Source of the DNA: Euprymna scolopes
Taxonomy: Eukaryota
Assembly: GCA_053919585.1 (NCBI GenBank)
Contig: CM132793.1
Strand: one strand, 5' to 3'
Length of the DNA: 64,000 nt
Shown one piece after another: positions 5,584 to 63,790 of this stretch (the first letter of the stretch is position 1; each line of letters begins with the position of its first letter). Position numbers and translations under genes: made by a program. The notes under the pieces are model-generated. The model saw only the letters and a list, made by a program, of their open reading frames with translations. It was not told the DNA's origin and ran no database searches.

Positions 5584-5750
5584 NNNNNNNNNNNNNNNNN
5601 NNNNNNNNNNNNNNNNNNNNNNNNNNNNNNNNNNNNNNNNNNNNNNNNNNNNNNNNNNNNNNNNNNNNNNNNNNNNNNNNNNNNNNNNNNNNNNNNNNNN
5701 NNNNNNNNNNNNNNNNNNNNNNNNNNNNNNNNNNNNNNNNNNNNNNNNNN
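5584..5750. other. Assembly gap
   Basis: Run of N. Confidence 1.
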
Positions 5751-18989: not shown

Positions 18990-19400
18990 ATGTTGGTAGA
19001 ATATGCAGCAGAGGATTCGTCAGCCTTTGGCGTGACGTTGTACCAGAATATTGCTTCCGGTATAGTACATTGTTTTCTAGCTGCGATCTTTTGTTACAGT
19101 TCTATAATATTCCTCGAATATGGCACAGTAAAATCGAAATCTGATCTTACACCCTTCTCAGAATTTTTAAACAAGCTGCTCTGAAAGGCAGTGTTTACAT
19201 CCATCAGAATCTCCGTCGAGGAAGGTGTCGACATATAGTAAATCAAGTTGTGTCGCAGTTAATCGATGTCAGAAAATGGTCACAATAGCAATGGGTAATA
19301 TCGATTACTATTCGGTGCCACGCCTGACACAGATTAGGGGAAATTATTAACTGTAGTTGTAGCTAGTCGAATGATTTGTGAAAATTTTGCAAGAGGGCCA
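18990..19400 (-). mobile_element. Decayed integrase fragment related to the LTR element at 58-62 kb
   Basis: Minus strand gives IAARKQCTIPEAIFWYNVTPK versus IAARKGCTVPEAVYWYNVTPK in the intact pol; also EILMD..TAF and WHRIVIDIT. Confidence 0.8.
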
Positions 19401-40389: not shown

Positions 40390-43300
40390 TACTTAGATAT
40401 AAATAAGTCACTTGTACCCATTCCCATCCTCCCCCTTCTTTTTAATGGAGAATAGATAATATAGTTGATGTGTTTTCGGAAGCTCCAGTAACTCTCGCTT
40501 CTCATTTTTTGTCTCTCAGTCCTCATTCATTGAGTGATTTTTCTGACAAAGGGTGAAGAAAAAGCTACTTAAAGGTCGGTAGTACTTGGTGAACAGTAGC
40601 CTGAGATGTCGGAAATTTTTCTGTCTCTATGTCCGTCCTTGTGGCCATGTCACTAGTAAGGGTGCTGGAGTTAATGTTTTGTCTGGGCTGACGTTATCCG
40701 CCTGATAGTCAGGGACCCGTCAAGCTGAATCCACTTTGAAAATTTTCCCCCACTCTTTATTTGTGCCTAAATCAAAACGTGGATTCCATCAACAAAGCTT
40801 CTTTCTTAGAACTGCACGCCTGTGGAACTCTGTTCCGTCTGCCTGCTTCCCACCTGACTACCACTTGGATGTCTTCAAGTACAACGTTAACAAAGTCCAA
40901 CGTTAACAAATTCCTAATGAACCGCCCCCTTAAGTAAACACTTCATCAAATCTCCACACTAACGTAATGTTTTTTTTTTCACAGTGATCACCACTTATCA
41001 AGGCCCGGAAGCCACTCAGGGATAAGGGTTATTGCAAGTACATTACGTTAGTGTGGAGATTTGATGAAGTGTTTACTTAAGAGGGCGGTTCATTAGGAAT
41101 TTGTTAACATTAGACTTGAAGACATCCAAGTTGTAGTCCGGTGGGAAGCAGGCAGACGGAACAGAGTTCCACAGGCGTGCAGTTCTAAGAAAGAAGCTTT
41201 GTTCATGGAATCCGCGCCTTGATCTAGGCACAGATATAGAGTGGGGGAAATTTTTCACAGTGGATTCAGCTAGACGGGTGTTTTTCGTGAAAGATTGGCG
41301 AGGGGGGGACCAGGGATTGGAGTTCAGACGAGCACCTGCCATGAAAATAACGATAAAACAAGAATAGGCTCGCAACGTCCCTTCTGTGGGAGAGGGGTTG
41401 CAGGGTAGGGAAAAGAGCATCCCCCACTAAACCATGAAGTCTATTTTGTACTCTGTCAAGGCATGATAGGCTGTTTTTGGCAGCTCCTGCCCAGATATGG
41501 CAACAGTATTCCATCCTTGGACGCACTTGGCTTTTATATAGATAGAGAATCGCATCAGTAGTGAGATATCTTCTGGAGCGGTAGAAGGATCCCACCATCT
41601 TTCCAGCGACCTTGGCAACAGACTTGATGTACGTGTTCCATTTCAGATCAGGAGTAAAGGTCAAACCCAGAAGCTTGTCAAAACACGGGGCCTCACCCAG
41701 ACGAGAGCCATCCATCACAATTGATGCCAGATGGGGATCAGAGCGTTGATGATGTAAGGATAGGAGTTTGGTTTTGGATGCATTAAAGGTAACTAGCCAC
41801 ATCTTCCCCCACTGAACCACACGCTCGAGATCAGAGGAGAGAGAATCAGAGAGAACTTCGTCATTTACAGCCTTTGATGTGTTGCCGTAGATGGTCGTGT
41901 CATCAGCATAGATGTCAACGAATGATTTAAGTATGTGTTTAGGGAGGTCATTGATGTAGATCAGGAAGAGAGTTGGGCCCAGGATTGACCCCTGAGAGAC
42001 TCCAGCATTTATATTGCAGGCCTCCGATTTTTGTCCATCTACCACTACTCTTATGAGCCTATCGGAGAGAAATGATTTAATGATTGAGAAAACATTTCCA
42101 GTTATACCGTAGCTGGAAATCTTGTGAAGTAGACCCTTATGCCATACCTTGTCGAAGGCCTTTGATATGTCAAGAGCAATTGCCCTAGAAAGGAAGCCTT
42201 TGTCAAGAGATTCACTAATCCTGTGGGATATAACCGTCAGCACATCTGCGGTAGATCTTGCAGAGCGGAAACCATATTGTGTGTCACTAAGAAGGTTATT
42301 CCTGCTGAGGTGGTTGACTATTTCTCTATTTAATATGGATTCCAGCAACTTACTCATAACACAGAGAAGACTTATTGGTCTGTACTGAGAGGGAGATGAC
42401 TTATCACCTGAATTCTTAAATACAGGGCAAACTGATGAGGTCTTCCAGGGAGTCGGAAAGCACTTCTCCTTAAGGCAGCGCTTAAATAGTTTCGTAAGTA
42501 TGGGAGCAAGTTCTGGTTGAAGCTTTTTTAACACTATAATTGGGATGCCATCAGGGCCAGTTGCTTTACTGGAATCTAGGTTTTTTATAAGCTTGGCGAC
42601 CTCATGCACGGATATTTATATGTTACCTAGCTTGTTCTGTGTTATAGGAGGAAATATGGGGAGTTGATGGCCTTCGTCGCATAGGGTAGAATTAGCTGCA
42701 AAGTTCTTTGCAAATAGTTTGGCCTTGTCTGACGCTGACGAGATGACCTCTGGTCCATTGATAATGGTTGGGATAGAACGCACACTTCTGTTCAGGATCC
42801 TATTTGTTATTTGCCAAAACTGGTGGGATCCAAGCCGCTGATCAGCTACCTTGGATTTAACAGACTGGGCATATAGCTCTCTTGCATTTTTGATTACTCT
42901 TTTACAGTGGTTGCTGGCAGTCCTGAAAGCAGCTTTAGTCTCAGTGCATCTATTACGTTGGTAGCTATGGAAAAAGTGATTTCTGTGCGCGATAGCAGCA
43001 GCACATTCTGGGGAGAACCATGGCTGGCTGTTAGGTTTTTGTTGGAATTTTTTAGATGGTATGAATTGGTCTATGCCTACAATTAACCATTCGGTCAGAT
43101 CTGATACTATAGAGGACACTTCCTTTTTAAACATGGAGTGCACAGGTAAATCAGATATGAATGTACGGAAGCTATCCCAGTCAGCCATAGAGTATCGGTA
43201 TACAGTACGGTGGAGGGGTACTCTGGGGGCTTCTTACATTTCGTTTTTATGTTAACTGATACGACGGAGTGGTCGGAGGATCCTAGGGGAGAATGAACGG

Positions 43301-43838
43301 TACATGAACATAGCTCAGGAGAAGTTGAGAGAAAAAGGTCTAAGAGGCTTGCATATTGATTGGGTGTATCGGGCACACGGGTGGGTTCGCGAACAATCTG
43401 AGTGAGGTCATAAGCAATGGCAAAATCATGACAAAACCTCCCCTCATCATCTGTCTTATTTGAATGGGTCAGCCATTCCACGTTATGGACGTTGAAGTCA
43501 CCACAGATGTGGATGTCAGCCGAGGGATGTGAAGACAGTATGTGGTCTATTTTCTCAGATATGCTCTTAAAGATAGTAACTCCGCTGTTGTGGGGCCTAT
43601 AGAGGGCAAATATAAATGCAGTGGTGTTAGCAAGTGCAACGCTGAAGCACATATAGGGTAAATTAGGATCTTCTCTAGAGATATCCCTGCCACATGGGAA
43701 GCCATCCTTAATGTAGGCACATATTCCATGCCCATGGCGATCTTGGGTGTAAGATTTAGCTGTTAAATTGGACTTGCAATAACCCGTATCCCTGAGTGGC
43801 TTCCGGGTCTTGATAAGTGGTGACCACTGTGTAAAAAA
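40390..43838 (+). mobile_element. Insertion with 10-bp TSD: short family-A derivative, itself split by an antisense family-A copy
   Basis: AAATGAACAC at 40380-40389 and 43839-43848; family-A 3' end at about 40723-40970 continues at 43772-43840. Confidence 0.85.
40970..43771 (-). mobile_element. Young 5'-truncated CR1/L2-group LINE family A (APE-RT ORF with about 3 lesions)
   Basis: ORF pieces 43107-43745 (GDFNVH, LDLFL, SDH), 42616-43188, 41266-42609 (ALDISKAFDKVWH, QGSILGP, YADD), 41073-41420; A-rich tail. Confidence 0.97.
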
Positions 43839-44389
43839 AAATGAACACACATCTACGAAAATGGCCAAAACACTAGAGGAAGACCTCCAATTTGCAGTAA
43901 AATGGGAACATAAATGAGTGGTCACATTGAATGCTGCCAAGACTTGTTTCATTCAATAATTACAAGAAAATCTCTCTACCACCATTAACAATAGGTAAAA
44001 CCCCATTACCTGAAAGTGCTTCTTTTAAATTTTTCGGCCTAATGTTCACAGGGAACATGAGTTGGGACGTGCCCCCGCGACGTAAGTATCCCCGACAAAC
44101 ACGACTAGCAACTAAATCCCACCCCTACAGAGTAGAGATCCCTAGATGTAAGATAACTTTCTACCCCAGTAGTTTTTTTCCTCAGAACTGCTAGACTTTG
44201 GAACTCCCTTACGGGTCCCTGCTTTCCAACTGTACTGACATGCAGAAGTTCAAGTGTAATGTGAACAAAACTCTTGCTGCACAACTCCTTACATAGCACC
44301 CCTGTCGCTTTTGTCCCTGATAATAGCCCTTTACATCAAAGTGACAATATGGCTTGTTTGGGGTGAAATATTATTTAAAAAGTGTCTAT

Positions 44390-49918: not shown

Positions 49919-52100
49919 NNNNNNNNNNNNNNNNNNNNNNNNNNNNNNNNNNNNNNNNNNNNNNNNNNNNNNNNNNNNNNNNNNNNNNNNNNNNNNNNNN
50001 NNNNNNNNNNNNNNNNNNNNNNNNNNNNNNNNNNNNNNNNNNNNNNNNNTGAATAAATTTGAAAATTTAAACATTTTTCAATAGGAAATTAACTCCGTAA
50101 ATACTCGAATCATTCTCAGATTATAAAGTTAGAGGTGCTAAATCTACTTTCTATTGTTATATTGCTTTTACTTCTTGAAAAAGGTTACATCATTATCATT
50201 ATTTTAAAATGAACTGAGTCTTCTGATATTTAAACATTGAGAATTCGAATTAAATTTGTCATTTTAATATATAGTGTAGTGTATGTATAGTTTGTCATAT
50301 AATATATAGTGTAGAAATATTTATATTTTGTTGTTTTTCTTTTGTTATATTGTGATAAATGTAATAAATAATTTTCGAGTTTAAATATATAATTACATTG
50401 TTGGCAATACGAATGCAATTTCAAGGTCATATGCAAGTGTTGTGTAGTTTTGATTCTTAACTTGATGCTGTCGTCTCAATACTTTCTAAGGAAAGAATAG
50501 ATAAATCATCAACACGAAATAACATATGCAAATCTTGTAAATATATTTAAATATGAACTCATTCCTGATAGAAAGTAAAGATAAGGAAATAAAAATGCAA
50601 AATAGCTGATTTTATTAGAAGCGAATTCGTATCGCGCGTAAATCAAAGGATTTAATATTGGATTCTGTGTGTAAAGAAAACAAGGGATCGACAACGTTAT
50701 TAACGTAATAATAAAACATGTGATTTTAAGCATTTATTACATTGCTATTTATGACTGCATTTCATAAAACTCTCATAAAACCGTGCGGTAAATTGAATAA
50801 ATATGCTTTCTTTAGGCATTATAGAAAATAAAATGAACTCAGGCTTTACAAACTAAAATGTTATTTTTAACTTGTGTGCTACAGGTAAATTACATTTATA
50901 TCTTAAGTGTTATAAAATATTAAATGTTATTTTTAACGTTAAATGCTATAGCAAATTTAAAATGCGATGACAAACGTCTGCATTTAAAAGGTAATAAAAT
51001 GCCACCTAAAACTTAAACGTTGTAAACAAAATTAATGCTATTTCAAAGTGAACCATTGCGAATATATTCTGATTTATAATTTTCATAAATATTCCGACTT
51101 TCAGTATTATAAGGAGTCTGAAGCGTAAGTGTTATGGCTGTAATTTATTCTGTTTTCTAAATAATTTTCACTTCAGATATTTTAATTTAAATAATTTTAT
51201 TTTAAAAATATTTTGTTTTATTTTGTAACAGAATGCGGTGACTACCAGAGACTAATAAGCAAAGGAGATGTAAAGCAAATGATTTGGGTAATTTTTTTGC
51301 ATANNNNNNNNNNNNNNNNNNNNNNNNNNNNNNNNNNNNNNNNNNNNNNNNNNNNNNNNNNNNNNNNNNNNNNNNNNNNNNNNNNNNNNNNNNNNNNNNN
51401 NNNNNNNNNNNNNNNNNNNNNNNNNNNNNNNNNNNNNNNNNNNNNNNNNNNCTACTGGCATTCACTCTGTCAACTCAACCAAATCTTACACATTCCTGAA
51501 CATTTCTTGACGATGACGAAAAACAACAAAATAGCGGCATGCTTCAAATACACAACTCTAACTATGACACATTTATTAATAACTTGGATCCATACACAAA
51601 ACGCTTTGCGAAAAATTAGAAAAATTAAAAAGGTATAACTAAACAAATCCTCTCCGTTGTATTTTACAATGCTTGTTTAAATGAATATATAAATAAATAA
51701 CGTTTCCGCTGTATTCCAAATTCCAAAGTTTATTTATCTTAATAATCAATTTATTCAAATTGAAAATGTCGGTACTTTGTTACAAACTTGTTTTTTTTTG
51801 TGTGAAACAATCAATATGTTCAGGGTAACATTGAATCTTTTCTTACGTATAGTTATAAAAAACAAAAATCTCTTTTGAAATGAAGAATGGTCATGTAATA
51901 TTGAAAATAAACCATATAAACTAACTCACTTCGTCATACAACCTCAATGCAAAGCTAAANNNNNNNNNNNNNNNNNNNNNNNNNNNNNNNNNNNNNNNNN
52001 NNNNNNNNNNNNNNNNNNNNNNNNNNNNNNNNNNNNNNNNNNNNNNNNNNNNNNNNNNNNNNNNNNNNNNNNNNNNNNNNNNNNNNNNNNNNNNNNNNNN
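49919..52100. other. Region containing three assembly gaps (49919-50049, 51304-51451, 51960-52100)
   Basis: Runs of N. Confidence 1.
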
Positions 52101-52252: not shown

Positions 52253-54269
52253 GACTTGACTATTCAAAAGTTCAATGAATAATGGATTTTTATTTTAGGT
52301 AGGAACTCTTTAAAAGTTGGAGTTAAAAAACTTAAAACACAGAACTTTAATTATAAGATGTAAAGAGAGAGGGGGCAATTTAAATAAAGTTAAAAGATTA
52401 TAACGGAGAAAGAGTGATTAAGGAGAGAAAAAAGAGAAATAGAGAAAGAAAATAGAGAGAAAAAAGTATAGAGAAAAAAAATACATATAATATGGAGAAG
52501 AAAAAGAAAAAAAATATAAATGGTTATTATAAAGAGAATAAGGACTAGAAGGGAAAACAAAGAATGTTGAGATATAGTTAAAAAGAGAAAGAAAGAAGGT
52601 AAGAATTAATAGGAGGGGAATCTTAAAGGAGTTTCCAGTATATAGAAAAAGAAAGAGAAAAAAAAAGAGAAAAAAAAATCTGCGTGTCAACCAATTTATG
52701 AACAATTATACAATTCAGTAATGAGACAAGATTAGTACAAATACAATCTAAACGTTAGAAATAAACATGTCAAAAAAAAGACAGCGAATGTATCCAACTG
52801 ACATATTTATCATCTAACATACGTCCACGAGTAATATCAACGCAGTTCAAACATACGTCTACAATTAATTAAGCCTTTTATACTAAATGATGCAAGTTTA
52901 AAGTTTTCTCGTTTTAATTAAATGAATATATAAGTGAAAGAGAAAAATAATAATGAAAGAACAATNNNNNNNNNNNNNNNNNNNNNNNNNNNNNNNNNNN
53001 NNNNNNNNNNNNNNNNNNNNNNNNNNNNNNNNNNNNNNNNNNNNNNNNNNNNNNNNNNNNNNNNNNNNNNNNNNNNNNNNNNNNNNNNNNNNNNNNNNNN
53101 NNNNNNNNNNNNNNTATTATCTTTTTAATATAACATATTTAGCCATAAGAGGGGATTAAATAAATTAAATAGAACTAATAAATTATAAATAATAATCTAC
53201 TAATACTTATATATNNNNNNNNNNNNNNNNNNNNNNNNNNNNNNNNNNNNNNNNNNNNNNNNNNNNNNNNNNNNNNNNNNNNNNNNNNNNNNNNNNNNNN
53301 NNNNNNNNNNNNNNNNNNNNNNNNNNNNNNNNNNNNNNNNNNNNNNNNNNNNNAAGGTGTAACACTATACTATTAAGTTGAAAGTTTAAGCTAGTTAAAT
53401 ATAAATATAAAGCCATATTAAAGCGCAAATTAATACATTCAAGACAGTATTACTAAAACATAGATACAAGTACACTTACATATAAATATATAAATATATT
53501 CAGGCCAAAGAAAGTAGTTAAATCAACAGAATACTCAAAAGTAGCGACACACAGGTAGATAGTAACAAAATTAAAAATAGTAAAATACATATGTATATAC
53601 CCACAGAGAACCAACATACATACAAATATACATATATATATATATAATTTTATGTATACACATACATACAAAACAATACACAAACATATGCACACAGTCA
53701 TATACTAATATACAACAACGCACACACACATATATATACGCACACATAAATATGTATAATTCACATAAACCATATACATAGAAATACATATGAATACAAA
53801 TTATTTGGCCAGAGTACAGATAGATGCATATACACATAAAAGCATACAAATGGACTGAATAAACACCACCAGGGGAGCAAACAACAAAGGAGGGTATACA
53901 AAATAATATAGAAATGTATAAATCTAATTACACACGGTCATAAAATAAACACATAGACACATACATATACACATAGACACACAGGTATATAAGATAGGGG
54001 AAATAAAGAATGAAATCAAGCGAGGGGAAAGTATATTAATAGTATTTTAATAAATTATAGAAATCAGTGACAATTTTAAATTATAAATTTTATATCTAAA
54101 TTAAATTACAAATCTTTTAAGTAATTTAATACTTAAAAGATTTGTAATTTAATTTAGATATAAAATTTATATAAATTTCATTCTTTATTAGTTCTATTTA
54201 ATTTATTTAATCCCCTCTTATGGCTAAATATGTTATATTAAAAAGATAATAAATATTAATTTTATTCTG

Positions 54270-55157: not shown

Positions 55158-55232
<75 letters not shown>

Positions 55233-55234
<2 letters not shown>

Positions 55235-55862
55235 AGGTGACCCTCCCCAATAAACAAAAGATAAATGGAGGCCATCTAGAACATATGCTGTAGAATGGAG
55301 AAAAAAAGGCCAAAGACCATAATGTTTTGATGTGATGTTTTGAATATAATAAACTAGTTATGACCAAAGTTTTATTTCATTTTTTTTTACACAGTGATCA
55401 CCACTTATCAAGGCCCGGAAGCCACTCAGGGATAAGGGTTATTGCAAGTACATTACGTTAGTGTGGAGATTTGATGAAGTGTTTACTTAAGGGGGCGGTT
55501 CATTAGGAATGTGTTAACGTTGGACTTGAAGACATCCAAGTTGTAGTCAGGTGGGAAGCAGGCAGACGGAACAGAGTTCCACAGGCGTGCAGTTCTAAGA
55601 AAGAAGCTTTGTTCATGGAATCCGCGTTTTGATTTAGGCACAGATATAGATTGGGGGAAATTTTTCACAGTGGATTCAGCTAGGGGGGACCAAAGATTGG
55701 AGTTCAGACGAACACCTGCCATGGAAATAACGATAAAACAAGGATAGGCTCGCAACGTCTCTTCTGATATGATATGAAAAAAGTAAATAAGTAAAGGTAA
55801 TAAATGGGAATATGTTCTAGATGGCCTCCATTTAGTTTCTGTTTTTTTGGGGGAGGTCACCT

Positions 55863-55864
<2 letters not shown>
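55233..55864. mobile_element. Tc1/mariner-type MITE embedded in (TA)n
   Basis: About 55-bp imperfect TIRs CAAGGTGACC..AAATGGAGGCCATCTAGAACATAT; (TA)n on both sides. Confidence 0.88.
55380..55762 (-). mobile_element. Short LINE family A 3' copy inside the MITE
   Basis: Nearly identical to 40970-41385 apart from an internal deletion. Confidence 0.95.
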
Positions 55865-55917
<53 letters not shown>

Positions 55918-56479: not shown

Positions 56480-58312
56480 TAAATTCCATTTTCACCCTAA
56501 ACAAGACAGTGTCACTTTGATGTAGGGAGCTACTATCGGATGCATAAATCTGGAGGAATAATATGTAGGGAATTGAGCAGCAAAATGTCTGTTCACATTA
56601 CACTTGAACCTCTGCATATCAGTACAGTTGGGAAAGCAGGAACCCAGACGGGAGTACCAAAGTCTAGCAGTTCTGGGAAAGAATCTATTAGAATAGAAGG
56701 CCTCTTACATCTAGATATCTCTACTGCGTAGGGTAGGGGCTTTGCTTCTTACCTGATTTATCAGGGGTATTTACATCGATAGGGGTTACAAGAGCTTGTA
56801 GTTCGTCGGAGCATCCACCATTAAAATAGTTTTAAAACAGGAGGAGAGATGCAACATTTCGTCGATGGAACAGAGGTTGAAGCTTAGATGAGCATTCATG
56901 ACCTATCAGATTGAAACCCTGTTCGGGGGCGAGATACTAGTAGCTAATGCACCAGCCCAAATGTGAGAACAATACACCGTACATGGACAAATGGTAGTCT
57001 TGTAAATGTACAAGATATATTAAGGTGTAAGTAATTTTCTAGCACGGTAGACAAAGCCCACCTTCCTTGCAGCGGCCCTGATAATGCTCTCAATTTATCT
57101 GTTCTAACTCATATTCTTTGTGAACGTTAAGCTGAGGAGTTTGAAAGAAGTACTTTCAGGCAATGTAACTTAAGCCATAGCTATTAGTGGTTGAGAAGGT
57201 TTCTTGGAGTTATTTAAGGAGAAAAGATTAGTCTTTACAGCATTGAATGTAACTTCTATTTTTGTCCCCATTCCACGACAGATTTAATGTCTTCTTCTAG
57301 TGTTTCTGCCATTTCCTTAGGTTTGTGTTCAGTTGTTTCCCCTTGTGCCGGTTACAGAGTGTAGTGTCATCAGCAAATATACCAATCTTTGAAACTATTT
57401 TATCAGGGAGGTCATTTATGAATATTAGGAATAATTATTTACTGAGGTACACCCGCGGTTAGATCATATTGTTTAGATATACGACCGTCGAGGATAACCT
57501 GGATTCTTCTCTTATTTAAGACGGATTGAATTATGTTAATTATTCGTCCTACGATTCCTTATGATCTGAGATTTTGAAGGACAATCGTGTCATACCATGT
57601 CGAAAGCTTTAGATATATCTATGTCTACCGTTCTCCCCTCCCATGCTTTGTCCACTGTATGGTATATACGCTTAGAGATTACAGTTAGGATATCTGATGT
57701 AGACCGAGCTTACAAAATCTATATTGTTGGTCTGTCAGAATTTACCAGCTGCAAGTTAATGGACTAGAGCTTAGTTTACTATGGACTCAGATATTTGGGC
57801 GAAAAGCGGGAGGTAAATTAATACGGCGATAAATTAATGGGTCAGTTTTTACGCCAGAATTCTTGTAAATTAGTACCACAGAACCAGTTTGTCAGCAAAA
57901 AGGAAGGCAAGAGTCGTTAAGGCATTTGTTGTAAAGTGTGGAGAGATCTGGACCAACATCAACCAAGCATTTTATTAATAGCATAGTGGAGATGATCGAG
58001 TCCACAGGATTTTAAAGTGTCTACGTTTTTATGATATCAGTCACCTGAGAAGGGGTGATTTTAATATCATCTAGTGTGACGACTGTCCGCAAAGGAAAAT
58101 TAGGGAAGGGTCCAAAGTTGAGTTTGAGACCAACCTGGACAGCATGATAGCTTTCTCTTTTTCGTGCAAACAACCTCATGATTATTGAATAGTTGTGGAA
58201 TTGTTCATTGCCCACTATTTACTACACTGCTGTCGGTTTTCCAGAAATCACGGGTTCCTAATTTCTGTGCTTCATTGCGTTTTCTAGTGGCTTCGCTATA
58301 TTCTCTCTTATC
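56480..58312 (-). mobile_element. Decayed LINE family B, RT half
   Basis: Homologous to 39265-44381; FADDTT, DISKAFD, ARLWYS remnants. Confidence 0.9.
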
Positions 58313-58674
58313 TGTCAGAGTTTTTTTTCTGTCTGTTTCGATTTACTCAAAACCGCACACACCTCGTCTTCTCATGTATCGTTCTCTTCTTCCTCTTCTA
58401 CTTCTTGCTCTTTTTCTTCTTTTCTCTTCTCAGTCGTCAGAAGCGTTGTCTTTGTCTTGACTACGTTTTTCCTTCTCCCTTCTTGCTCACAGTGACCCGT
58501 TTTTATGCTAAGCTGAACTCTCGTGTGTGCGAGAGAACACGAGATTTTGCGTGATTACTTAGCAATATTAACCGGCCGCCGCCATCTTGCCATTTTTCTT
58601 TGGACGTGCCCGCTTTGCAGAGTCCACACTTCGAGCGTTTGTCAGGTAAGCCCGTCTGTTCGCAATTTATTACA
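58313..58674 (-). repeat. 3' LTR
   Basis: Direct repeat of 62420-62781; outer terminus altered. Confidence 0.95.
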
Positions 58675-61600
58675 CACTCCCCCCTGATCTCATTATCACA
58701 GAAAGAGCAGGGAGGCGGTGGCCTTTTTCTTCGAGTGCTTCTTCGGAGAGGGGGATTCGGGGCTTCATCATCGTCTGAGCTGTCTTCCGTGACACGAAGG
58801 TCGGCGAACCTAAAGCTGAGCATCGCAGTATCACTGTCCGGGCCTTCATCATCAGCAGGAGGGTCACTACTTTGAAGGCTACCACTCTCAGTGTCGCTGT
58901 GCGTTGAAGCCGTCATGAACCAGAATGATGGGTCGCTCGTCACGGATTCAATTTCACTATCTTCGTCAAGCGGCAGCTGCGTTTGGAATACTGATCTTAA
59001 GTCTTTAATATGACGAGGTACTCCATCAACTCGCACCGCCTGCGGGCTGATCACTTCAGTGACATGAACGGTTCCGTAGCGAGTCGTGCACTGGCCTCGG
59101 GGTTTTTTAACCCAGACGACATCTCCCTCTTTTATGTTCTTTTGTGGTGGCTCCGGTTCAGGTAGTGAGCTGCTCTCCAAACCTCTCACCCTGACACGGT
59201 ATGTATGTAGCGCGTTGGCTGGCGCGGTGGAGGGTGAAACATCGTCCTTAGGGGTGACGTTGTACCAATAGACTGCTTCAGGTACCGTACACCCCTTCCG
59301 CGCTGCGATTGTCTTAACAGTTCTGTGATTGCGCTCAATAATCCCGTTTCCACTGGGAACATGGGCACACCGAAAACGCAGATGGACACCCCAGCCATCT
59401 GCAAACTGTTTAAACGGCTCACTAACAAAAGCGGGGCCATTGTCGGTGAGTATCTCAGAAGGAGGGCCACGCTCGAGGAACACACCTTCCAACTCATGGA
59501 TAATGGCAGCCGCGTCCTGCCGGCGAAGGGGCCGCCACAATGAAAACCTAGATGGTCCACAGTCGATAAGCGTAAAAAAATGCCTCCCGTTGTAGTGCGT
59601 TATGTCCATCGCAATCCTATCCCAACTACGCTTCACACTGAGTATTCCCTTCTTCCACCGGACAGGTACTGGCTCGATCGATCGGCAGGTGTTGCAGCTT
59701 CCCACAACAGATTTCACAGCCCTCCGAGACACAGAGGGGTCAACCAATCTGGCGAAGTAAAGCGTTCGGTTTACACCGGGGTGCCCGCTTTGGCAATGGA
59801 CATCATTAATATGCTCCGGGCTGAGTCTATGTCCCACTGCAGCGCAATTTACAGGTGCTGACTCGTTCACTTCTTTTGGCAGGTCTAGCCAACGGCGTGG
59901 CACTCTGGTCAGACGATCCGCCTGATTCAAACAGGACTGCACGAGTGTCACATCTATGACCAAGTCGTATTCCTTAGTGGTTTCGGTACGGGTAGTAAGC
60001 CGCCTCCGGATCAACATTTCGGCCGACGCCTTCGTTGTCAGACGTGCTTTTCCGTTCAAGGCATTGGTCATCCACCGATGCACACACGTGGAATCCGTGA
60101 TGATGTGAAGGATTCTAGCCTGCCACTGAAGCGCTAGATTGACTCCTTTCAGTGTAGCATCGAGTTCAGCTAGGTGTATATGCTTGGCGTCATTCTCCGG
60201 CCGAAGCCAGCAGGCATCTTCTATTATCCTTCCGTCGACCGCCAGAGCAACGCCAAGGGCAAGTGAGCTGGCGTCTACCCAAACTGTAAATTCACTCCCA
60301 TCGACGCACCAGCTCCCCCGTACAGGGTCATCATTGGTCACTCTGGCCACAACTTCCACCAGCATGCTTCGCAGGGCAGGATCATGCACCTCATCGTCCC
60401 ATCCAGTTGACATAGAAGTTGCCCGTCGCTTTATGGCCGCTACAGCCACTCGGAGCCACCCACACACAGGGAAGTGACCCACCAATTTTCCGCAAATGGA
60501 AAACGTGCTCAGACGTGTGATGGTAGATGGGATTTCCGGGATTTCACCACTCCTTCCCCATTGAAGGCCATCTGCACTTCCGCTCACCTGAAGTCCGAGC
60601 ACTTTCGCCCCATCTTGTAGCCGCTCCGGCTCCTTGCACGACAATCCGAAGTGCTCGAAGTGTTCTTTGACCGCCTGGGCAGACAGGAGGCTCTCATTGA
60701 CAAAAATGTCGTCTATATACGACGATGTCGCATGTTGCACCGCTTCATCTTGACGCCGGATCGCCTGCATGATTGCTATCATGATGTTAGGGGCTACATT
60801 CAGGCCGAATCCTAGCCTGGTCAAGCAATAGCGAGCTCCTTTGATCACCACCGTCTGGAACGGCCACAGCGATTTCTCAACACGTATTTGCAAGTACGCT
60901 CTTCGCAAGTCCAGTATGGCTGCTTCCGACCCCTGCCGCCGCCACTTCCGTAGTTTATGAGCACAGACATCAGCCCCCGCAGTGTGTGGGTCAACGTATT
61001 CATTAAGTTCCCGGTAATCAAGAATAGGTCGAACTTTCTGCTTGTCCCCTTGTCTGACAACCATCAGGGGAATTAGCCCCCGCGGGGGCCCGAGCTCATC
61101 CTCTGGGTATGGAACTAACCAGCCATTATCCAGCCACACTTGAAGTTCTGCCTCGTACTGCCCCCTAAGCCACGCAGGAGGGGGATACTCTGTAAGTCGA
61201 TTCCGCAATGACACTGGTGGCTGGTCGCCTGCCCATTTCCAGGACGCTGTCCAAGTGTTTGTGCCCTTATCGTATTCTGCATGGAAGTCGGGCTCATCGA
61301 GAGTGATTGCTGCACACATTTGTTTGTTTGGTCGAGAGAAACTCACATCACCGGCGCCGTTCACAGTAATTCCGTCTAGCTGTGTGATAGCGTCCATTCC
61401 AAGGAGAAGGTCATATCCGAGCAGCTCCCCATCGACCACTAACACCGCCACAGCAACCGGAGAGCCATTGCCAATGCTGATATGAACAACGCTGATCCCA
61501 GAACACACCAATGAGCCTTGGCCGACACTAAGTACAGGGATCCTTCGTTTCTTCCATGTGGCGCAATATTCCTTTCGAAGAAGGGTTTGGGTACAGCCGG

Positions 61601-61727
61601 TGTCAACCAGCGCTGAACGTTCACATCCATCAACTTGAACTGTTACTGCAGGCAGCGCTTTGTTCAATGCCGCGTTGGGGAGGGTGCTAGCGCTGCGGTG
61701 TCCTCCCCTTGCCCGTTTCCCGGACAA
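58503..61727 (-). CDS. pol: Pol polyprotein (protease, RT, RNase H, integrase), probably reached by -1 frameshift
   Basis: ALVDTG, LDLRRAYLQ, LGFGLNVAP, YIDDI, VDAS..ELDA..TDS, HHCC, MDI..TDNG..IERNHR; 1074 codons without a stop. Confidence 0.95.
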   Translation of the reverse strand: MSGKRARGGHRSASTLPNAALNKALPAVTVQVDGCERSALVDTGCTQTLLRKEYCATWKKRRIPVLSVGQGSLVCSGISVVHISIGNGSPVAVAVLVVDGELLGYDLLLGMDAITQLDGITVNGAGDVSFSRPNKQMCAAITLDEPDFHAEYDKGTNTWTASWKWAGDQPPVSLRNRLTEYPPPAWLRGQYEAELQVWLDNGWLVPYPEDELGPPRGLIPLMVVRQGDKQKVRPILDYRELNEYVDPHTAGADVCAHKLRKWRRQGSEAAILDLRRAYLQIRVEKSLWPFQTVVIKGARYCLTRLGFGLNVAPNIMIAIMQAIRRQDEAVQHATSSYIDDIFVNESLLSAQAVKEHFEHFGLSCKEPERLQDGAKVLGLQVSGSADGLQWGRSGEIPEIPSTITRLSTFSICGKLVGHFPVCGWLRVAVAAIKRRATSMSTGWDDEVHDPALRSMLVEVVARVTNDDPVRGSWCVDGSEFTVWVDASSLALGVALAVDGRIIEDACWLRPENDAKHIHLAELDATLKGVNLALQWQARILHIITDSTCVHRWMTNALNGKARLTTKASAEMLIRRRLTTRTETTKEYDLVIDVTLVQSCLNQADRLTRVPRRWLDLPKEVNESAPVNCAAVGHRLSPEHINDVHCQSGHPGVNRTLYFARLVDPSVSRRAVKSVVGSCNTCRSIEPVPVRWKKGILSVKRSWDRIAMDITHYNGRHFFTLIDCGPSRFSLWRPLRRQDAAAIIHELEGVFLERGPPSEILTDNGPAFVSEPFKQFADGWGVHLRFRCAHVPSGNGIIERNHRTVKTIAARKGCTVPEAVYWYNVTPKDDVSPSTAPANALHTYRVRVRGLESSSLPEPEPPQKNIKEGDVVWVKKPRGQCTTRYGTVHVTEVISPQAVRVDGVPRHIKDLRSVFQTQLPLDEDSEIESVTSDPSFWFMTASTHSDTESGSLQSSDPPADDEGPDSDTAMLSFRFADLRVTEDSSDDDEAPNPPLRRSTRRKRPPPPCSFCDNEIRGECVINCEQTGLPDKRSKCGLCKAGTSKEKWQDGGGRLILLSNHAKSRVLSHTREFSLA

Positions 61728-62398
61728 CTCCGCGCTATGTGGCCTGGCTTATTGCATTGGTGACACCGTATTACTTGTCGTGCTCCATAATTAGGGGTGC
61801 GCCTTGTACCGCTTTTGCAGTCTCTGGAAAAGTGGTTGGGGCCACCACAGGTATAGCATCGTAGACCCTTCGTTGGCGAGTCCAGAGTGTCAACAGCTGC
61901 GGAGACTAGTTCTCGATCGTCTTTCAAGATGTTTCGTGCTCTCGCCAATAACTCCTCCAATCCAATCTCAGTGAGTCTTGACGATGCTCGCAGCAGTCGA
62001 CTTGCCTCATCCGGAAGTCCCGACAAAAAGGCGCATGCCAATATGCGATCACTTGCACCGCCGAAGGGAGTGGCAAGCTTTTTCAAGTCGGCCATGTAGA
62101 CATCCACTGTCTCCCCCGGCCCAAGTCGGCGTTCGGAAAACTGCCTCCAGGCGACAAAAGGGTCTGTACCAAATGCCCCGTATAGCGCTTGTGTAATCTG
62201 CTCCATGGTCGGATCCTCCCCTAGCTGCTGGTACACGGCATAAGCCCCTTTAGTGAGTCTCAATTGGATAACCATATCTGGGTCTTTAATCTTGCACAAC
62301 CGGCAAACGCGCTCAGCCTTTCCCAGCCATTCGACCACCGAGGGACCAGTGGGGGAGCCATCGAATTCCGGAATTAATCTGATGTCAAATTTCTCCAT
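61664..62398 (-). CDS. gag: Gag with two CCHC zinc knuckles
   Basis: CYTCGGPNHFSRDC and CHQCNKPGHIARSC; starts 18 nt after the 5' LTR. Confidence 0.95.
   Translation of the reverse strand: MEKFDIRLIPEFDGSPTGPSVVEWLGKAERVCRLCKIKDPDMVIQLRLTKGAYAVYQQLGEDPTMEQITQALYGAFGTDPFVAWRQFSERRLGPGETVDVYMADLKKLATPFGGASDRILACAFLSGLPDEASRLLRASSRLTEIGLEELLARARNILKDDRELVSAAVDTLDSPTKGLRCYTCGGPNHFSRDCKSGTRRTPNYGARQVIRCHQCNKPGHIARSCPGNGQGEDTAALAPSPTRH
61670..61721 (-). promoter_or_regulatory. -1 programmed ribosomal frameshift signal
   Basis: G GGA AAC in the gag frame (61721-61715), 6-nt spacer, GGGGAGG/CCTCCCC stem; pol lies in the -1 frame. Confidence 0.85.
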
Positions 62399-62416
62399 AC
62401 CAAAGCCGAAATAGCT
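62399..62416 (-). promoter_or_regulatory. Non-canonical primer-binding site complementary to the tRNA-Phe 5' end
   Basis: Plus strand ACCA AA GCCGAAATAGCT directly abutting the LTR TGTAATC. Confidence 0.75.
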
Positions 62417-62781
62417 TGTAATCAGAGTTTTTTTTCTGTCTGTTTCGATTTACTCAAAACCGCACACACCTCGTCTTCTCATGTATCGTTCTCTTCTTCC
62501 TCTTCTACTTCTTGCTCTTTTTCTTCTTTTTTCTTCTCAGTCGTCAGAAGCGTCGTCTTTGTCTTGACTACGTTTTTCCTTCTCCCTTCTTGCTCACAGT
62601 GACCCGTTTTTATGCTAAGCTGAACTCTCGTGTGTGCGAGAGAACACGAGATTTTGCGTGATTACTTAGCAATATTAACCGGCCGCCGCCATCTTGCCAT
62701 TTTTCTTTGGACGTGCCCGCTTTGCAGAGTGCACACCTCGAGCGTTTGTCAGGTAAGCCCGTCTGTTCGCAATTTATTACA
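62417..62781 (-). repeat. 5' LTR
   Basis: TGTAAT...ATTACA termini; AGTAAA signal near its downstream end on the minus strand. Confidence 0.95.
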
Positions 62782-63790
62782 CAGTTATTTGTTTCTTACT
62801 ATTACTTCTAGCTTCTATAAGCTGTTGTCTGTTTGTACTGGACTTTAGTCGACTCAATTTGCGGTATACATGCTGTCTTTGTGCATTGGCAGTTGCACAA
62901 GTAGAAGTAAACCATTGAGGAGACTGGGGCTTGCTATAGAAGTTCGGCGTGGGAACATATGCTTCAATATCCGGTTTGAATCATTCAGCGGTTTCATTTG
63001 CGTACTGTTCAGCGGGAAGAGAACAGGTATTTGCCCATGAAGCATCTCTGATGCGTTCCCTGCTGGTTTCCCAGTCAGCCTTTGTATAATACTTTGTCGT
63101 TTACCATAACAGCTCTTCAGATTTTGGCAGCGAATTTATGACGATTTCAACCATTATCACAACGTGATCAGCATTTCCGAGTTGACTATGGACATTCGTT
63201 ACATAATCATTCGGAATTGTGGTCAGAAATAGATATGGAAGTAAGGCATGTTTATGTTGCTTATATGGCAAACCTGTCGGAAACATAACCGCCTCTGATA
63301 GGAAATGATGCTACCAAGGTCTGTATAATAGAGAATCCAAACCAATTTCTGTGGTGGATATTGAAGTCAATAAATACATGTATTTGTGCGCTAGTATCTA
63401 GGGAGAGTGTTGTATCTATGCTGTAATAACTTGGTTGATTGGGGTACAGTCCTGGGTGGAGGGAGAGCGGGAGAGAAAATATAAATAGCTAATGTTATGT
63501 TGCATTTTAAGTCAAAAGCAGATCAAGGTCTGTTCATCTTATTCTAGTTCTGTTTCTCTAGTCAAGGGAAGGGTGTTTTGAATATAGTCCGTTTATATCT
63601 ATGTGTGCGTCCTAAGGCAAAGTGGGGGATAACCAGATATGTTGAAGTGGTTAGAGGGGATAAAGGAGTATAGGTTAGTTTCATTAGCGCTAAGATATCC
63701 GGGATATTTATTAAGAAAAATGACATCAACTAAATTAGTTTTGAGCCCGCGGATATTCGTGAATGCAACCCACAAGGAAGAAGGCAAATT
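62782..63790 (-). mobile_element. Decayed LINE family B, APE half (continuation of 56480-58312)
   Basis: FTNIRGLKTN, ETNL, DFNIHH, LGNADHVVI; joins the RT half across the LTR insertion. Confidence 0.9.

What the first reader, a model, noticed from the sequence alone, without database searches (positions are those of the whole stretch)
62399..62423. Intact LTR retroelement whose primer-binding site matches the 5' end of tRNA-Phe plus its ACCA tail
Seen: only 18 nt separate the 5' LTR from the gag ATG, and they do not begin with the usual TGG. The primer-sense (plus) strand reads ACCA-AA-GCCGAAATAGCT then TGTAATCAG (LTR). Established: GCCGAAAUAGCU is nucleotides 1-12 of animal cytosolic tRNA-Phe(GAA), whose 3' end is ACCA; normal PBSs pair with the 3'-terminal 8-18 nt of a tRNA, and the known exceptions are copia/Ty5 (5' half of tRNAi-Met) and Tf1-type self-priming. 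Inference: the RNA could clamp both tRNA ends like a circularised tRNA, and reverse transcription could start from a 12-nt 5' tRNA fragment ending exactly at the LTR edge, or from A76 with strand displacement. This would be an unusual priming system. I cannot tell whether it has already been described for this lineage.
Basis: partly seen in the sequence, partly recalled or inferred. Interest (0 to 1): 0.9.

Follow-up and report, generated by a model that had tools for sequence, protein, structure and literature searches.

The report
LTR element primed from tRNA 5' end
A young, intact LTR retrotransposon carries, where the primer-binding site should be, 12 bases complementary to the first 12 bases of tRNA-Phe, and every relative examined has the same kind of box, which points to an undescribed way of starting reverse transcription.

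Summary
A 4,471-bp LTR element lies on the minus strand (58313-62783). Only 18 nt (62399-62416) separate its 5' LTR from the gag ATG. The first 12 of them are complementary to nt 1-12 of tRNA-Phe(GAA), as printed in a paper.

The comparison with relatives is the decisive result. Of 49 relatives whose leader could be read, 47 have a complete 12-nt box directly after the LTR, one contig breaks off inside it, and one degraded copy shows none. Their pol is 37-60% identical. The five bases complementary to the Rfam tRNA consensus at positions 8-12 barely vary. The variation lies in the acceptor-stem part. One variant equals the start of tRNA-Lys3. Conservation stops after base 12. The 3' LTR copies lack the box, so synthesis must start at its first base.

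Self-priming is excluded.

Best reading: a host tRNA pairs through its 5' end, is cut after nt 12, and that 3'-OH primes. Host tRNA sets could not be checked. No description of this mode turned up in the open literature. New variant of a known kind; interest is high.

The parts
58313..62783 (-). Whole LTR retrotransposon (4,471 bp), the only copy in the window. Its G+C content is about 49-54%, against flanks of 22-36%.
   Evidence: Direct repeat pair, LTR alignments, exact bounds, self-BLAST, composition.
62417..62783 (-). 5' LTR, 367 bp. It starts TGTGTAAT and ends GATTACA in element sense.
   Evidence: It is 98.9% identical to the 3' LTR.
62405..62416 (-). 12-nt primer-binding box, AGCTATTTCGGC in element sense. 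It is complementary to nt 1-12 of tRNA-Phe(GAA) and directly abuts the LTR.
   Evidence: tRNA-Phe letters come from papers. The same position and length are seen in 47 of 49 relatives. The Rfam tRNA consensus at positions 8-12 is UAGCu.
62399..62404 (-). 6-nt spacer, TTTGGT in element sense, between the box and the gag ATG. It is not conserved.
   Evidence: In relatives the spacer is 0-26 nt in 29 of 33 elements and has no shared sequence.
61664..62398 (-). gag ORF, 244 aa, open, with two CCHC zinc knuckles.
61715..61721 (-). Slippery heptamer G GGA AAC in the gag frame, inside the 64-nt gag/pol overlap. pol is in the -1 frame, so a -1 ribosomal frameshift is inferred.
   Evidence: and the ORF coordinates.
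58503..61727 (-). pol ORF, 1074 aa, open. Domain bounds: protease 61374-61655, RT 60696-61043 (YIDD motif), DUF7047 60336-60518, RNase H-like 60057-60188, integrase zinc domain 59682-59828, integrase core 59361-59618. The ORF runs through the polypurine tract and 174 nt into the 3' LTR.
   Evidence: Profile search against PDB.
58677..58684 (-). Polypurine tract GGGGGGAG, directly upstream of the 3' LTR. The same tract occurs in relatives L002, L003, L005 and L085.
58313..58676 (-). 3' LTR, 364 bp. It is followed by flanking DNA, not by the box.

Best explanation
The 12 nt after the 5' LTR are the element's primer-binding site. It pairs not with the 3' end of a tRNA but with its 5'-terminal 12 nt: the 5' strand of the acceptor stem (1-7), U8, A9 and the first three bases of the D stem (10-12).

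In this copy, in its closest relatives and in a barnacle copy, the tRNA is tRNA-Phe(GAA). Other lineages of the family have boxes that fit other tRNA 5' ends.

Inferred sequence of events:
1. Gag's zinc knuckles help open the tRNA, and nt 1-12 anneal to the box.
2. The tRNA is cut between nt 12 and 13, at the end of the 12-bp RNA duplex. The cut could be made by the element's own RNase H, as in Tf1-type self-priming, or by a host nuclease, as is assumed for half-tRNA primers.
3. The 3'-OH of nt 12 primes minus-strand strong-stop DNA into U5.
4. Later, plus-strand strong-stop synthesis copies the 12-nt RNA primer and runs off at tRNA nt 1. That would explain why the box is exactly 12 nt long and why conservation stops there.

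Shown: the anatomy, the family-wide conservation, the tRNA-like pattern of variation, and the absence of a self-primer. Inferred: the identity of the primer in each host, the cut, the enzyme that makes it, and the run-off.
For: - The window's box is the complement of the first 12 nt of tRNA-Phe(GAA) as printed in two papers.
- Coverage: 41 metagenome or ENA loci with a gag N-terminus all carry a box, although L004 breaks off inside it. Macrobrachium rosenbergii L083, Trichuris suis L084 and Petrolisthes L085 carry one, as do L211 and Amphibalanus L212. The three loci L008, L014 and L032 lack a gag N-terminus on the contig but still show a box. That makes 47 of 49 relatives with a complete 12-nt box directly after the LTR end. 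Only the degraded Trichinella locus L213 shows none.
- Shares of the commonest base by column across 37 non-redundant contexts: position -1 is 100%; +1 to +6 are 97-100%; +7 is 81%; +8 and +9 are 57%; +10 to +12 are 95-97%; +13 is 54%, and background follows.
- The near-invariant AGCTA is the exact complement of the Rfam tRNA consensus at positions 8-12 (UAGCu). The variable columns fall in the acceptor stem.
- The box of L054 is the complement of the first 12 nt of the tRNA-Lys3 primer printed in PMC3832253.
- In public viral contigs, tRNAs that start with the complement of the commonest variant plus CAG are all tRNA-Phe(GAA) (10 of 10 called). For the second variant they are Thr, Phe and Met. 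These are therefore real tRNA 5' ends.
- 3' LTR copies are followed by flank, not by the box (window; L003, L005, L015, L083, L084, L085). L085 has a perfect 5-bp target duplication that fixes its LTR ends. The first base copied is therefore the one next to box position 1.
- The base before the box is always A and cannot pair with tRNA C13, which is the next base in the Phe and Lys3 primers.
- The box type follows the pol tree but switches several times.
- No canonical TGG site lies nearby. In five relatives the gag ATG abuts the box.
Against: - No host tRNA set could be read. There is no tRNA gene in the window, in 30 metagenome loci or in two of the genome loci. Only the Phe and Lys3 assignments rest on printed (human) tRNA sequences. 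The other variants have no match in the searchable literature.
- A 3'-OH at tRNA nt 12 needs a cut inside the D stem, and no nuclease is known to make it.
- No experimental data of any kind (strong-stop DNA, small RNA) were available.
- The column statistics carry an ascertainment bias, because contexts were collected by their box.
- The window copy lacks a clean target-site duplication.
- The literature check covers open-access papers and preprints only.
Confidence: 0.68

Rival explanations
1. The box binds the tRNA 5' end, or another factor, only as an auxiliary site for primer selection, packaging or translation control. The real primer is something else: a different small RNA ending in ...AGCU-3', a site elsewhere, or an unknown mode.
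For: Extra tRNA-genome contacts outside the priming duplex are known for Ty1 and Ty3 (review PMC5371799). The nuclease needed for the best explanation is unknown. The box often abuts the gag start codon, so it could also affect translation.
Against: - The LTR ends exactly at the box in all elements and the 3' LTR lacks the box. That places the first templated base next to box position 1.
- No canonical TGG site is conserved downstream.
- No complement of the box lies in the LTR.
- The variable positions behave like tRNA acceptor stems.
Confidence: 0.15
2. One reading: the leader pairs with both ends of tRNA-Phe (nt 1-12 and the ACCA tail), and synthesis starts from A76 with strand displacement.
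For: In the window the spacer TTTGGT contains TGGT, which is complementary to ACCA.
Against: - None of the other eight Phe-box elements (L002, L012, L015, L016, L018, L027, L211, L212) has TGG after the box.
- Among 39 contexts, only the window and L006 have a TGG that is not part of the ATGG of the start codon.
- In five relatives there is no spacer at all.
- Priming from A76 paired 2 nt downstream of the box would place the box inside U5 and hence inside the 3' LTR. It is not there.
Confidence: 0.03
3. Tf1/sushi-type self-priming: the box pairs with the 5' end of the element's own transcript.
For: The box is 12 nt long, close to the roughly 11 nt I recall for Tf1. There is no TGG. Self-priming is widespread from fungi to vertebrates (PMC4600332).
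Against: The longest exact stretch of the box complement in the 450 nt upstream is at most 7 nt in every one of 45 contexts, no better than shuffled sequence. The 18-nt leader has no second match in the window with up to 3 mismatches.
Confidence: 0.02
4. Chance, or a deletion derivative of a normal element whose canonical primer-binding site was lost.
For: The window copy has a 3-nt indel at the LTR end and no clean target duplication.
Against: The same box, at the same place, occurs in relatives down to 37% pol identity from nematodes, decapods, a barnacle and many metagenomes. No relative has a canonical site.
Confidence: 0.01

Closest known systems
Half-tRNA priming of copia, Ty5 and the plant Osser/Bryco/Bianca lineages (Pseudoviridae, 'hemivirus' type)
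   Same: The primer is a piece of a host tRNA that keeps the tRNA's 5' end, not its CCA end. An internal cut has to create the 3'-OH (PMC5371799; PMC6317226).
   Different: - There the site pairs with the region ending in the anticodon stem-loop, the primer is about half a tRNA, and the tRNA is initiator Met or Ile.
- Here the site pairs with nt 1-12 only, the cut would be in the D stem, and the tRNAs are Phe, Lys-like and others.
- The gene order also differs. Here integrase follows RT; in copia-type elements it precedes RT.
Tf1/sushi self-priming (Metaviridae)
   Same: A short RNA duplex lies next to U5, formed by the very 5' end of an RNA. It is 12 bp here and, from my recollection, about 11 bp in Tf1. 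The primer is released by a cut at the end of that duplex, and no CCA end is used (PMC4600332; PMC5371799).
   Different: In Tf1 the RNA is the element's own transcript. Here no complement of the box exists in the LTR, and the box matches host tRNA 5' ends.
Canonical tRNA 3'-end primer-binding sites of retroviruses and most LTR retrotransposons
   Same: Same position directly after U5, similar length (8-18 nt), lineage-specific choice of tRNA, and a partner polypurine tract before the 3' LTR.
   Different: The canonical site begins TGG and pairs with the CCA end. Standard annotation pipelines search only tRNA 3' ends (for example the methods of PMC13524379), so this family would be scored as lacking a site.
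Recently named animal LTR lineages: Odin, Troyka, Kuafuorterviruses
   Same: They are compact gag-pol LTR elements of invertebrates that fall outside the classical Pfam signatures.
   Different: - Troyka has CG..CG termini and 3-bp duplications. Here the termini are TG..CA, and a relative has a 5-bp duplication.
- Kuafuorterviruses have IADD, VADD or LADD in RT and are 5-6 kb long. Here the motif is YIDD and the element is 4.5 kb.
- Odin is reported from sea anemones and has a dual RNase H.
- Neither the Odin nor the Kuafuortervirus paper mentions a primer-binding site or tRNA. The Troyka paper was read in outline only.

Membership tests
LTR retrotransposon (Ortervirales type) | Two long terminal direct repeats with TG..CA ends | tested here: met
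   LTRs of 367 and 364 bp, 98.9% identical, starting TGTG and ending ACA.
LTR retrotransposon (Ortervirales type) | [quoted passage not shown] | tested here: met
   Pfam hits. Both ORFs are open. A -1 slippery site lies in the gag/pol overlap.
LTR retrotransposon (Ortervirales type) | Polypurine tract before the 3' LTR | tested here: met
   GGGGGGAG at 58677-58684. The same tract occurs in L002, L003, L005 and L085.
LTR retrotransposon (Ortervirales type) | Target-site duplication of 4-6 bp | tested here: inconclusive
   The window copy has none (flanks ATAAC versus GATAA in element sense). Relative L085 has a perfect 5-bp duplication, ATGTT.
Canonical tRNA 3'-end priming | Site after U5 begins TGG and pairs with the CCA end of a tRNA | tested here: not met
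   The leader starts AGCT. No conserved TGG occurs in 39 contexts.
Half-tRNA (copia/Ty5-type) priming | Site pairs with the tRNA region ending in the anticodon stem-loop, usually of initiator Met | tested here: not met
   The site pairs with nt 1-12 of tRNA-Phe. The base before the box cannot pair with nt 13.
Tf1/sushi self-priming | Site is complementary to a sequence in the 5' LTR at the start of the transcript | tested here: not met
   At most 7 nt of complement in the 450 nt upstream, the same as in shuffles, in 45 contexts.
Ty3/gypsy (Metaviridae) | Order PR-RT-RH-IN, with RT/RNase H and gag of the Ty3 type | tested here: inconclusive
   The order is met. The Pfam families RT_RNaseH and RT_RNaseH_2 are not hit in any of 23 members. 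Instead the RNase H region hits RVT_3 or RNase_H. Retrotrans_gag appears only weakly in two relatives. No reference tree could be built with these tools.
BEL/Pao (Belpaoviridae) | Pao-type protease/RT and gag signatures (Pfam Peptidase_A17, DUF1758, DUF1759) | tested here: not met
   None of these families is hit at E up to 1 in 23 members or in four gag proteins.
Troyka | CG..CG termini and 3-bp target duplication | tested here: not met
   TG..CA termini and a 5-bp duplication in L085. The definition is from PMC12440569.
Kuafuorterviruses | IADD, VADD or LADD in place of YXDD in RT; length 5-6 kb | tested here: not met
   The RT motif is YIDD and the element is 4.47 kb. The definition is from PMC11673190.
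Odin retrotransposons | Dual RNase H; sister group to lokiretroviruses in RT trees | tested here: inconclusive
   Only about 130 aa lie between the RT motif and the RNase H-like hit, and part of that is the 61-aa DUF7047. No Odin sequence was at hand for a tree, and none was recovered as a named hit.

The most novel reading that the evidence does not exclude
A whole, widespread family of invertebrate LTR retroelements starts reverse transcription from nucleotide 12 of a host tRNA. The tRNA's 5' end forms a 12-bp duplex with the genome. The element's own RNase H cuts at the end of that duplex, a Tf1-like ruler applied to a host tRNA. The site is rewritten each cycle by run-off copying of the 12-nt primer. 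The family numbers about 500-1,100 protein clusters at 50% identity and occurs in nematodes, decapods, barnacles and marine and soil metagenomes. This would be a third way of using tRNA as a primer, beside the 3' end and the half tRNA, and it is invisible to current annotation tools.
Probability: 0.45. Interest if true: 0.85.

Novelty: new variant of a known kind. Interest (0 to 1): 0.78.

Why it matters
- **A gap in the accepted list.** How reverse transcription is primed is a defining trait of retroelement lineages. The modes listed in the papers read here for LTR elements are the tRNA 3' end, the half tRNA, and self-priming. A site that pairs with the first 12 nt of a tRNA would add a mode that links the last two: a host tRNA used the way Tf1 uses its own 5' end.
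- **A concrete biochemical question.** What cuts a tRNA in the D stem?
- **A possible use for very short 5' tRNA fragments.**
- **A practical gap in annotation.** Pipelines that look only for tRNA 3' ends will call every member of this family 'no PBS'.
- **A simple marker.** The box is an LTR end followed by 12 nt complementary to a tRNA 5' end. That makes it easy to find and classify these elements in invertebrate genomes.

Tried and rejected
- **Self-priming.** I looked for the box complement in the 450 nt upstream of the box in 45 contexts. The result was at chance level.
- **ACCA clamp.** I counted TGG after the box in 39 contexts. It is not conserved.
- **Structured leader.** The 201-nt U5-box-gag RNA folds no better than shuffles (z = 0.13).
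- **tRNA genes.** None in the window, in 30 metagenome loci or in L083/L084. Rfam found nothing in the window.
- **Canonical sites for the same tRNAs** (TGG + N + acceptor strand) in the window and loci. Only one irrelevant hit.
- **Exact look-up of the window's gag** to identify the host genome. It is not on record. P0001 (98% identical) comes from a single Logan run.
- **Literature.** Full-text searches for the complements of the other box variants, as DNA and as RNA, found no tRNA hit. Searches for a described 5'-end tRNA primer site found nothing relevant. The supplement of PMC13524379 is not held.
- **Classification.**
  - The single-sequence PDB search gives only retroviral integrases.
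  - The profile search gives betaretroviral integrase and lentiviral RT as best hits. The PDB is dominated by retroviruses, so this does not place the family.
- **Loci that yielded nothing.** Trichinella locus L213 gave no recognisable box and is probably degraded. No DNA was held for P0011.
- **The sigma-70 promoter scan** is not meaningful for a eukaryotic LTR.
- **Script bug.** One of my scripts had a bug for a contig-end case and printed much useless output. The valid lines were used.

Full report
**1. What is at the coordinates**

The window's minus strand carries a complete LTR retrotransposon, 58313-62783 (4,471 bp).
- The two LTRs (62417-62783 and 58313-58676) are 98.9% identical over 362 nt. 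They differ by a 3-nt indel at the end that faces the leader.
- In element sense they begin TGTG and end ACA. A polypurine tract, GGGGGGAG, sits directly before the 3' LTR.
- gag (61664-62398, 244 aa, two CCHC knuckles) and pol (58503-61727, 1074 aa; protease, RT with YIDD, DUF7047, RNase H-like, integrase) are both open.
- The two ORFs overlap by 64 nt, with pol in the -1 frame. The heptamer G GGA AAC lies in the gag frame at 61715-61721.
- pol runs through the polypurine tract and 174 nt into the 3' LTR.
- The copy has no clean target-site duplication.
- It is far richer in G+C (about 0.5) than its surroundings (0.22-0.36).

**2. The observation**

Exactly 18 nt (62399-62416) separate the LTR from the gag ATG. 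In element sense they read AGCTATTTCGGC, then TTTGGT.
- The complement of the first 12 (plus strand 62405-62416) equals the first 12 nt of the Phe(GAA)-tRNA forward primer printed in PMC10505166. It also equals the start of a tRNA-Phe 5' fragment listed in PMC12025293.
- The host's own tRNA-Phe could not be read. The window has no tRNA gene and no Rfam match.

**3. Relatives**

pol has hundreds of relatives at 42-62% identity. They come from Trichuris, Trichinella, decapods, a barnacle, and many 4-4.8 kb contigs of marine and other metagenomes. The family-specific stretch around DUF7047 finds 1,132 clusters at E up to 0.001, and 534 at 1e-10, among 1.84 billion representatives.

I fetched 80 metagenome loci, two ENA contigs and five genome loci.
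- Every one of the 41 metagenome or ENA loci that contains a gag N-terminus has a 12-nt box directly after the LTR-terminal base. The one partial case is L004, whose contig breaks off inside the box.
- The same holds for L083 (Macrobrachium), L084 (Trichuris suis), L085 (Petrolisthes), L211 and L212 (Amphibalanus).
- Three more loci (L008, L014, L032) show a box on contigs where no gag N-terminus was found. In all, 47 of 49 relatives have a complete box.
- Only the Trichinella locus showed no box, and it looks degraded.

The boxes as they stand:

| Box | Loci |
|---|---|
| AGCTATTTCGGC | window, L002, L012, L015, L016, L018, L027, L211, L212 |
| AGCTATCTAGGC | 15 loci, including both decapods |
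| AGCTATCGCGGC | 10 loci |
| AGCTATCACGGC | L014, L017 |
| AGCTATCCCGGC | L019, L023, L032 |
| AGCTATCGAGGC | Trichuris suis (L084) |
| AGCTATCCGGGC | L054 |
| AGCTATTTCGTC | L024 |
| AGCTATCACGCG | L045, L048 |
| AGCTGTCTAGGC | L049 |
| CGCTATCTGTGC | L059, L065 |
| AGCGAACGCGGC | L061 |

**4. The pattern of conservation**

The shares of the commonest base across 37 non-redundant contexts are given under the best explanation. In short, the base before the box and box positions 1-6 and 10-12 hardly vary, positions 7-9 vary, and from position 13 on nothing is conserved. These figures carry an ascertainment bias, because contexts were collected by their box. The sharp edges on both sides are real, however, and no locus with a readable leader lacked a box.
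- The Rfam tRNA model has UAGCu at positions 8-12, an acceptor stem at 1-7 and a D stem at 10-13.
- So the near-invariant AGCTA is the complement of tRNA positions 8-12, and the variable columns face the acceptor stem.
- The L054 box is the complement of the first 12 nt of the tRNA-Lys3 primer in PMC3832253.
- In IMG/VR contigs, tRNAs that start with the complement of the commonest variant plus CAG are all tRNA-Phe(GAA) (10 called). For the second variant they are Thr (12), Phe (3) and Met (1). These are phage or prokaryotic tRNAs. They show only that such sequences are real tRNA 5' ends.
- On a neighbour-joining tree of single-frame RT pieces, the box type follows clades but changes several times. 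The Phe type occurs in two distant clades.

**5. Why the box is the priming site**

- In the window and in L003, L005, L015, L083, L084 and L085, the 3' LTR copy is followed by flanking DNA, not by the box.
- In L085 a perfect 5-bp duplication (ATGTT) fixes both LTR ends.
- U5 therefore ends at the base before the box, and the first base copied by the reverse transcriptase is that base. The primer's 3'-OH must then sit on the nucleotide paired with box position 1, which is tRNA nt 12.
- The base before the box is always A, so it cannot pair with C13 of the Phe or Lys3 sequences. The duplex is exactly 12 bp.

**6. What is excluded**

- Self-priming. The box complement is not in the LTR: at most 7 nt match, the same as in shuffles.
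- The ACCA clamp. The TGGT of the window's spacer is absent from the other eight Phe-box elements. Spacers are 0-26 nt in 29 of 33 elements, and zero in five. Apart from the window and L006, every TGG after a box is the ATGG of the start codon.
- A specially structured leader.

**7. Mechanism (inferred)**

A host tRNA anneals through nt 1-12 and is cut between nt 12 and 13. The new 3'-OH primes minus-strand strong-stop DNA. Plus-strand strong-stop synthesis then copies the 12-nt RNA and runs off at tRNA nt 1. That would give a site of exactly 12 nt, renewed from the tRNA in each cycle.

The cut could be made by the element's RNase H, by analogy with Tf1-type self-priming (PMC4600332; PMC5371799). 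It could also be made by a host enzyme, as is assumed for half-tRNA primers. Pre-formed 12-nt fragments are an alternative source. None of these steps is shown.

**8. Comparison with what is known**

- Reviews and surveys list three modes: tRNA 3' ends, half tRNAs (Met, Ile; anticodon region) and self-priming.
- A recent large survey searched only the 12 nt at tRNA 3' ends.
- Ten full-text searches found no paper describing a site complementary to the 5'-terminal nucleotides of a tRNA. The library holds open-access papers and preprints only.
- The family is not BEL/Pao by Pfam signatures. It is not Troyka and not a Kuafuortervirus.
- Its relation to Ty3/gypsy and to Odin is unresolved with these tools.
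- Its integrase and RT profiles score best against retroviral structures. This is weak evidence, given the make-up of the PDB.

**9. Verdict**

- I rate it a new variant of a known kind, namely tRNA-fragment priming.
- The main open points are the host tRNA sets and any direct evidence for the cut.

**10. Slip**

All tRNA letters here come from the window, fetched loci, Rfam output or the cited papers.

Noticed in passing
window 41266-43952 (minus strand): A non-LTR retrotransposon. An endonuclease ORF (Exo_endo_phos_2) and an RT ORF (RVT_1, E 9e-36) lie in series, split over three ORF pieces.
   Followed up: partly
window 55184-55254 and 55843-55913: A 71-nt inverted repeat, 96% complementary, with 588 nt between the arms. 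It is made of long (TA)n runs plus about 20 nt of unique sequence. It could be the ends of a small foldback or TIR element.
   Followed up: partly
window 58000-62800 compared with its flanks: The element has 49-54% G+C in a region of 22-36% G+C that is rich in microsatellites. The contrast is strong for a young insertion (LTRs 98.9% identical).
   Followed up: no
window 58503-58684: The pol ORF reads through the polypurine tract and 174 nt into the 3' LTR. In relatives the pol C-terminus (a basic stretch and a CxxC) also covers the tract.
   Followed up: partly
loci L003, L035, L045, L048, L062 (leaders): In five relatives the gag ATG follows the 12-nt box with no spacer. In most others the spacer is under 27 nt. 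These elements have almost no leader, so any packaging signal must lie in R-U5 or in gag.
   Followed up: no
window 19024-19103: An 80-nt stretch is 74% similar to the gag-pol junction region of the element (element positions 934-1012). It may be a remnant of a related copy.
   Followed up: no
window 5584-5750, 49919-50049, 51304-51451, 51960-52100, 52966-53114, 53215-53353: Six runs of N (875 bases in all). They were left as they are.
   Followed up: no
L211:45-54 and L211:4088-4097: The closest full relative (59% pol identity) has LTRs that end in ...AGA rather than ...CA. The Phe-type box still follows directly.
   Followed up: partly
L006 (1228 and 5251), L014 (521 and 4538): In these metagenome contigs the LTR, box and start of gag appear twice. 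This fits tandem copies or an assembly that wrapped around the LTR.
   Followed up: no
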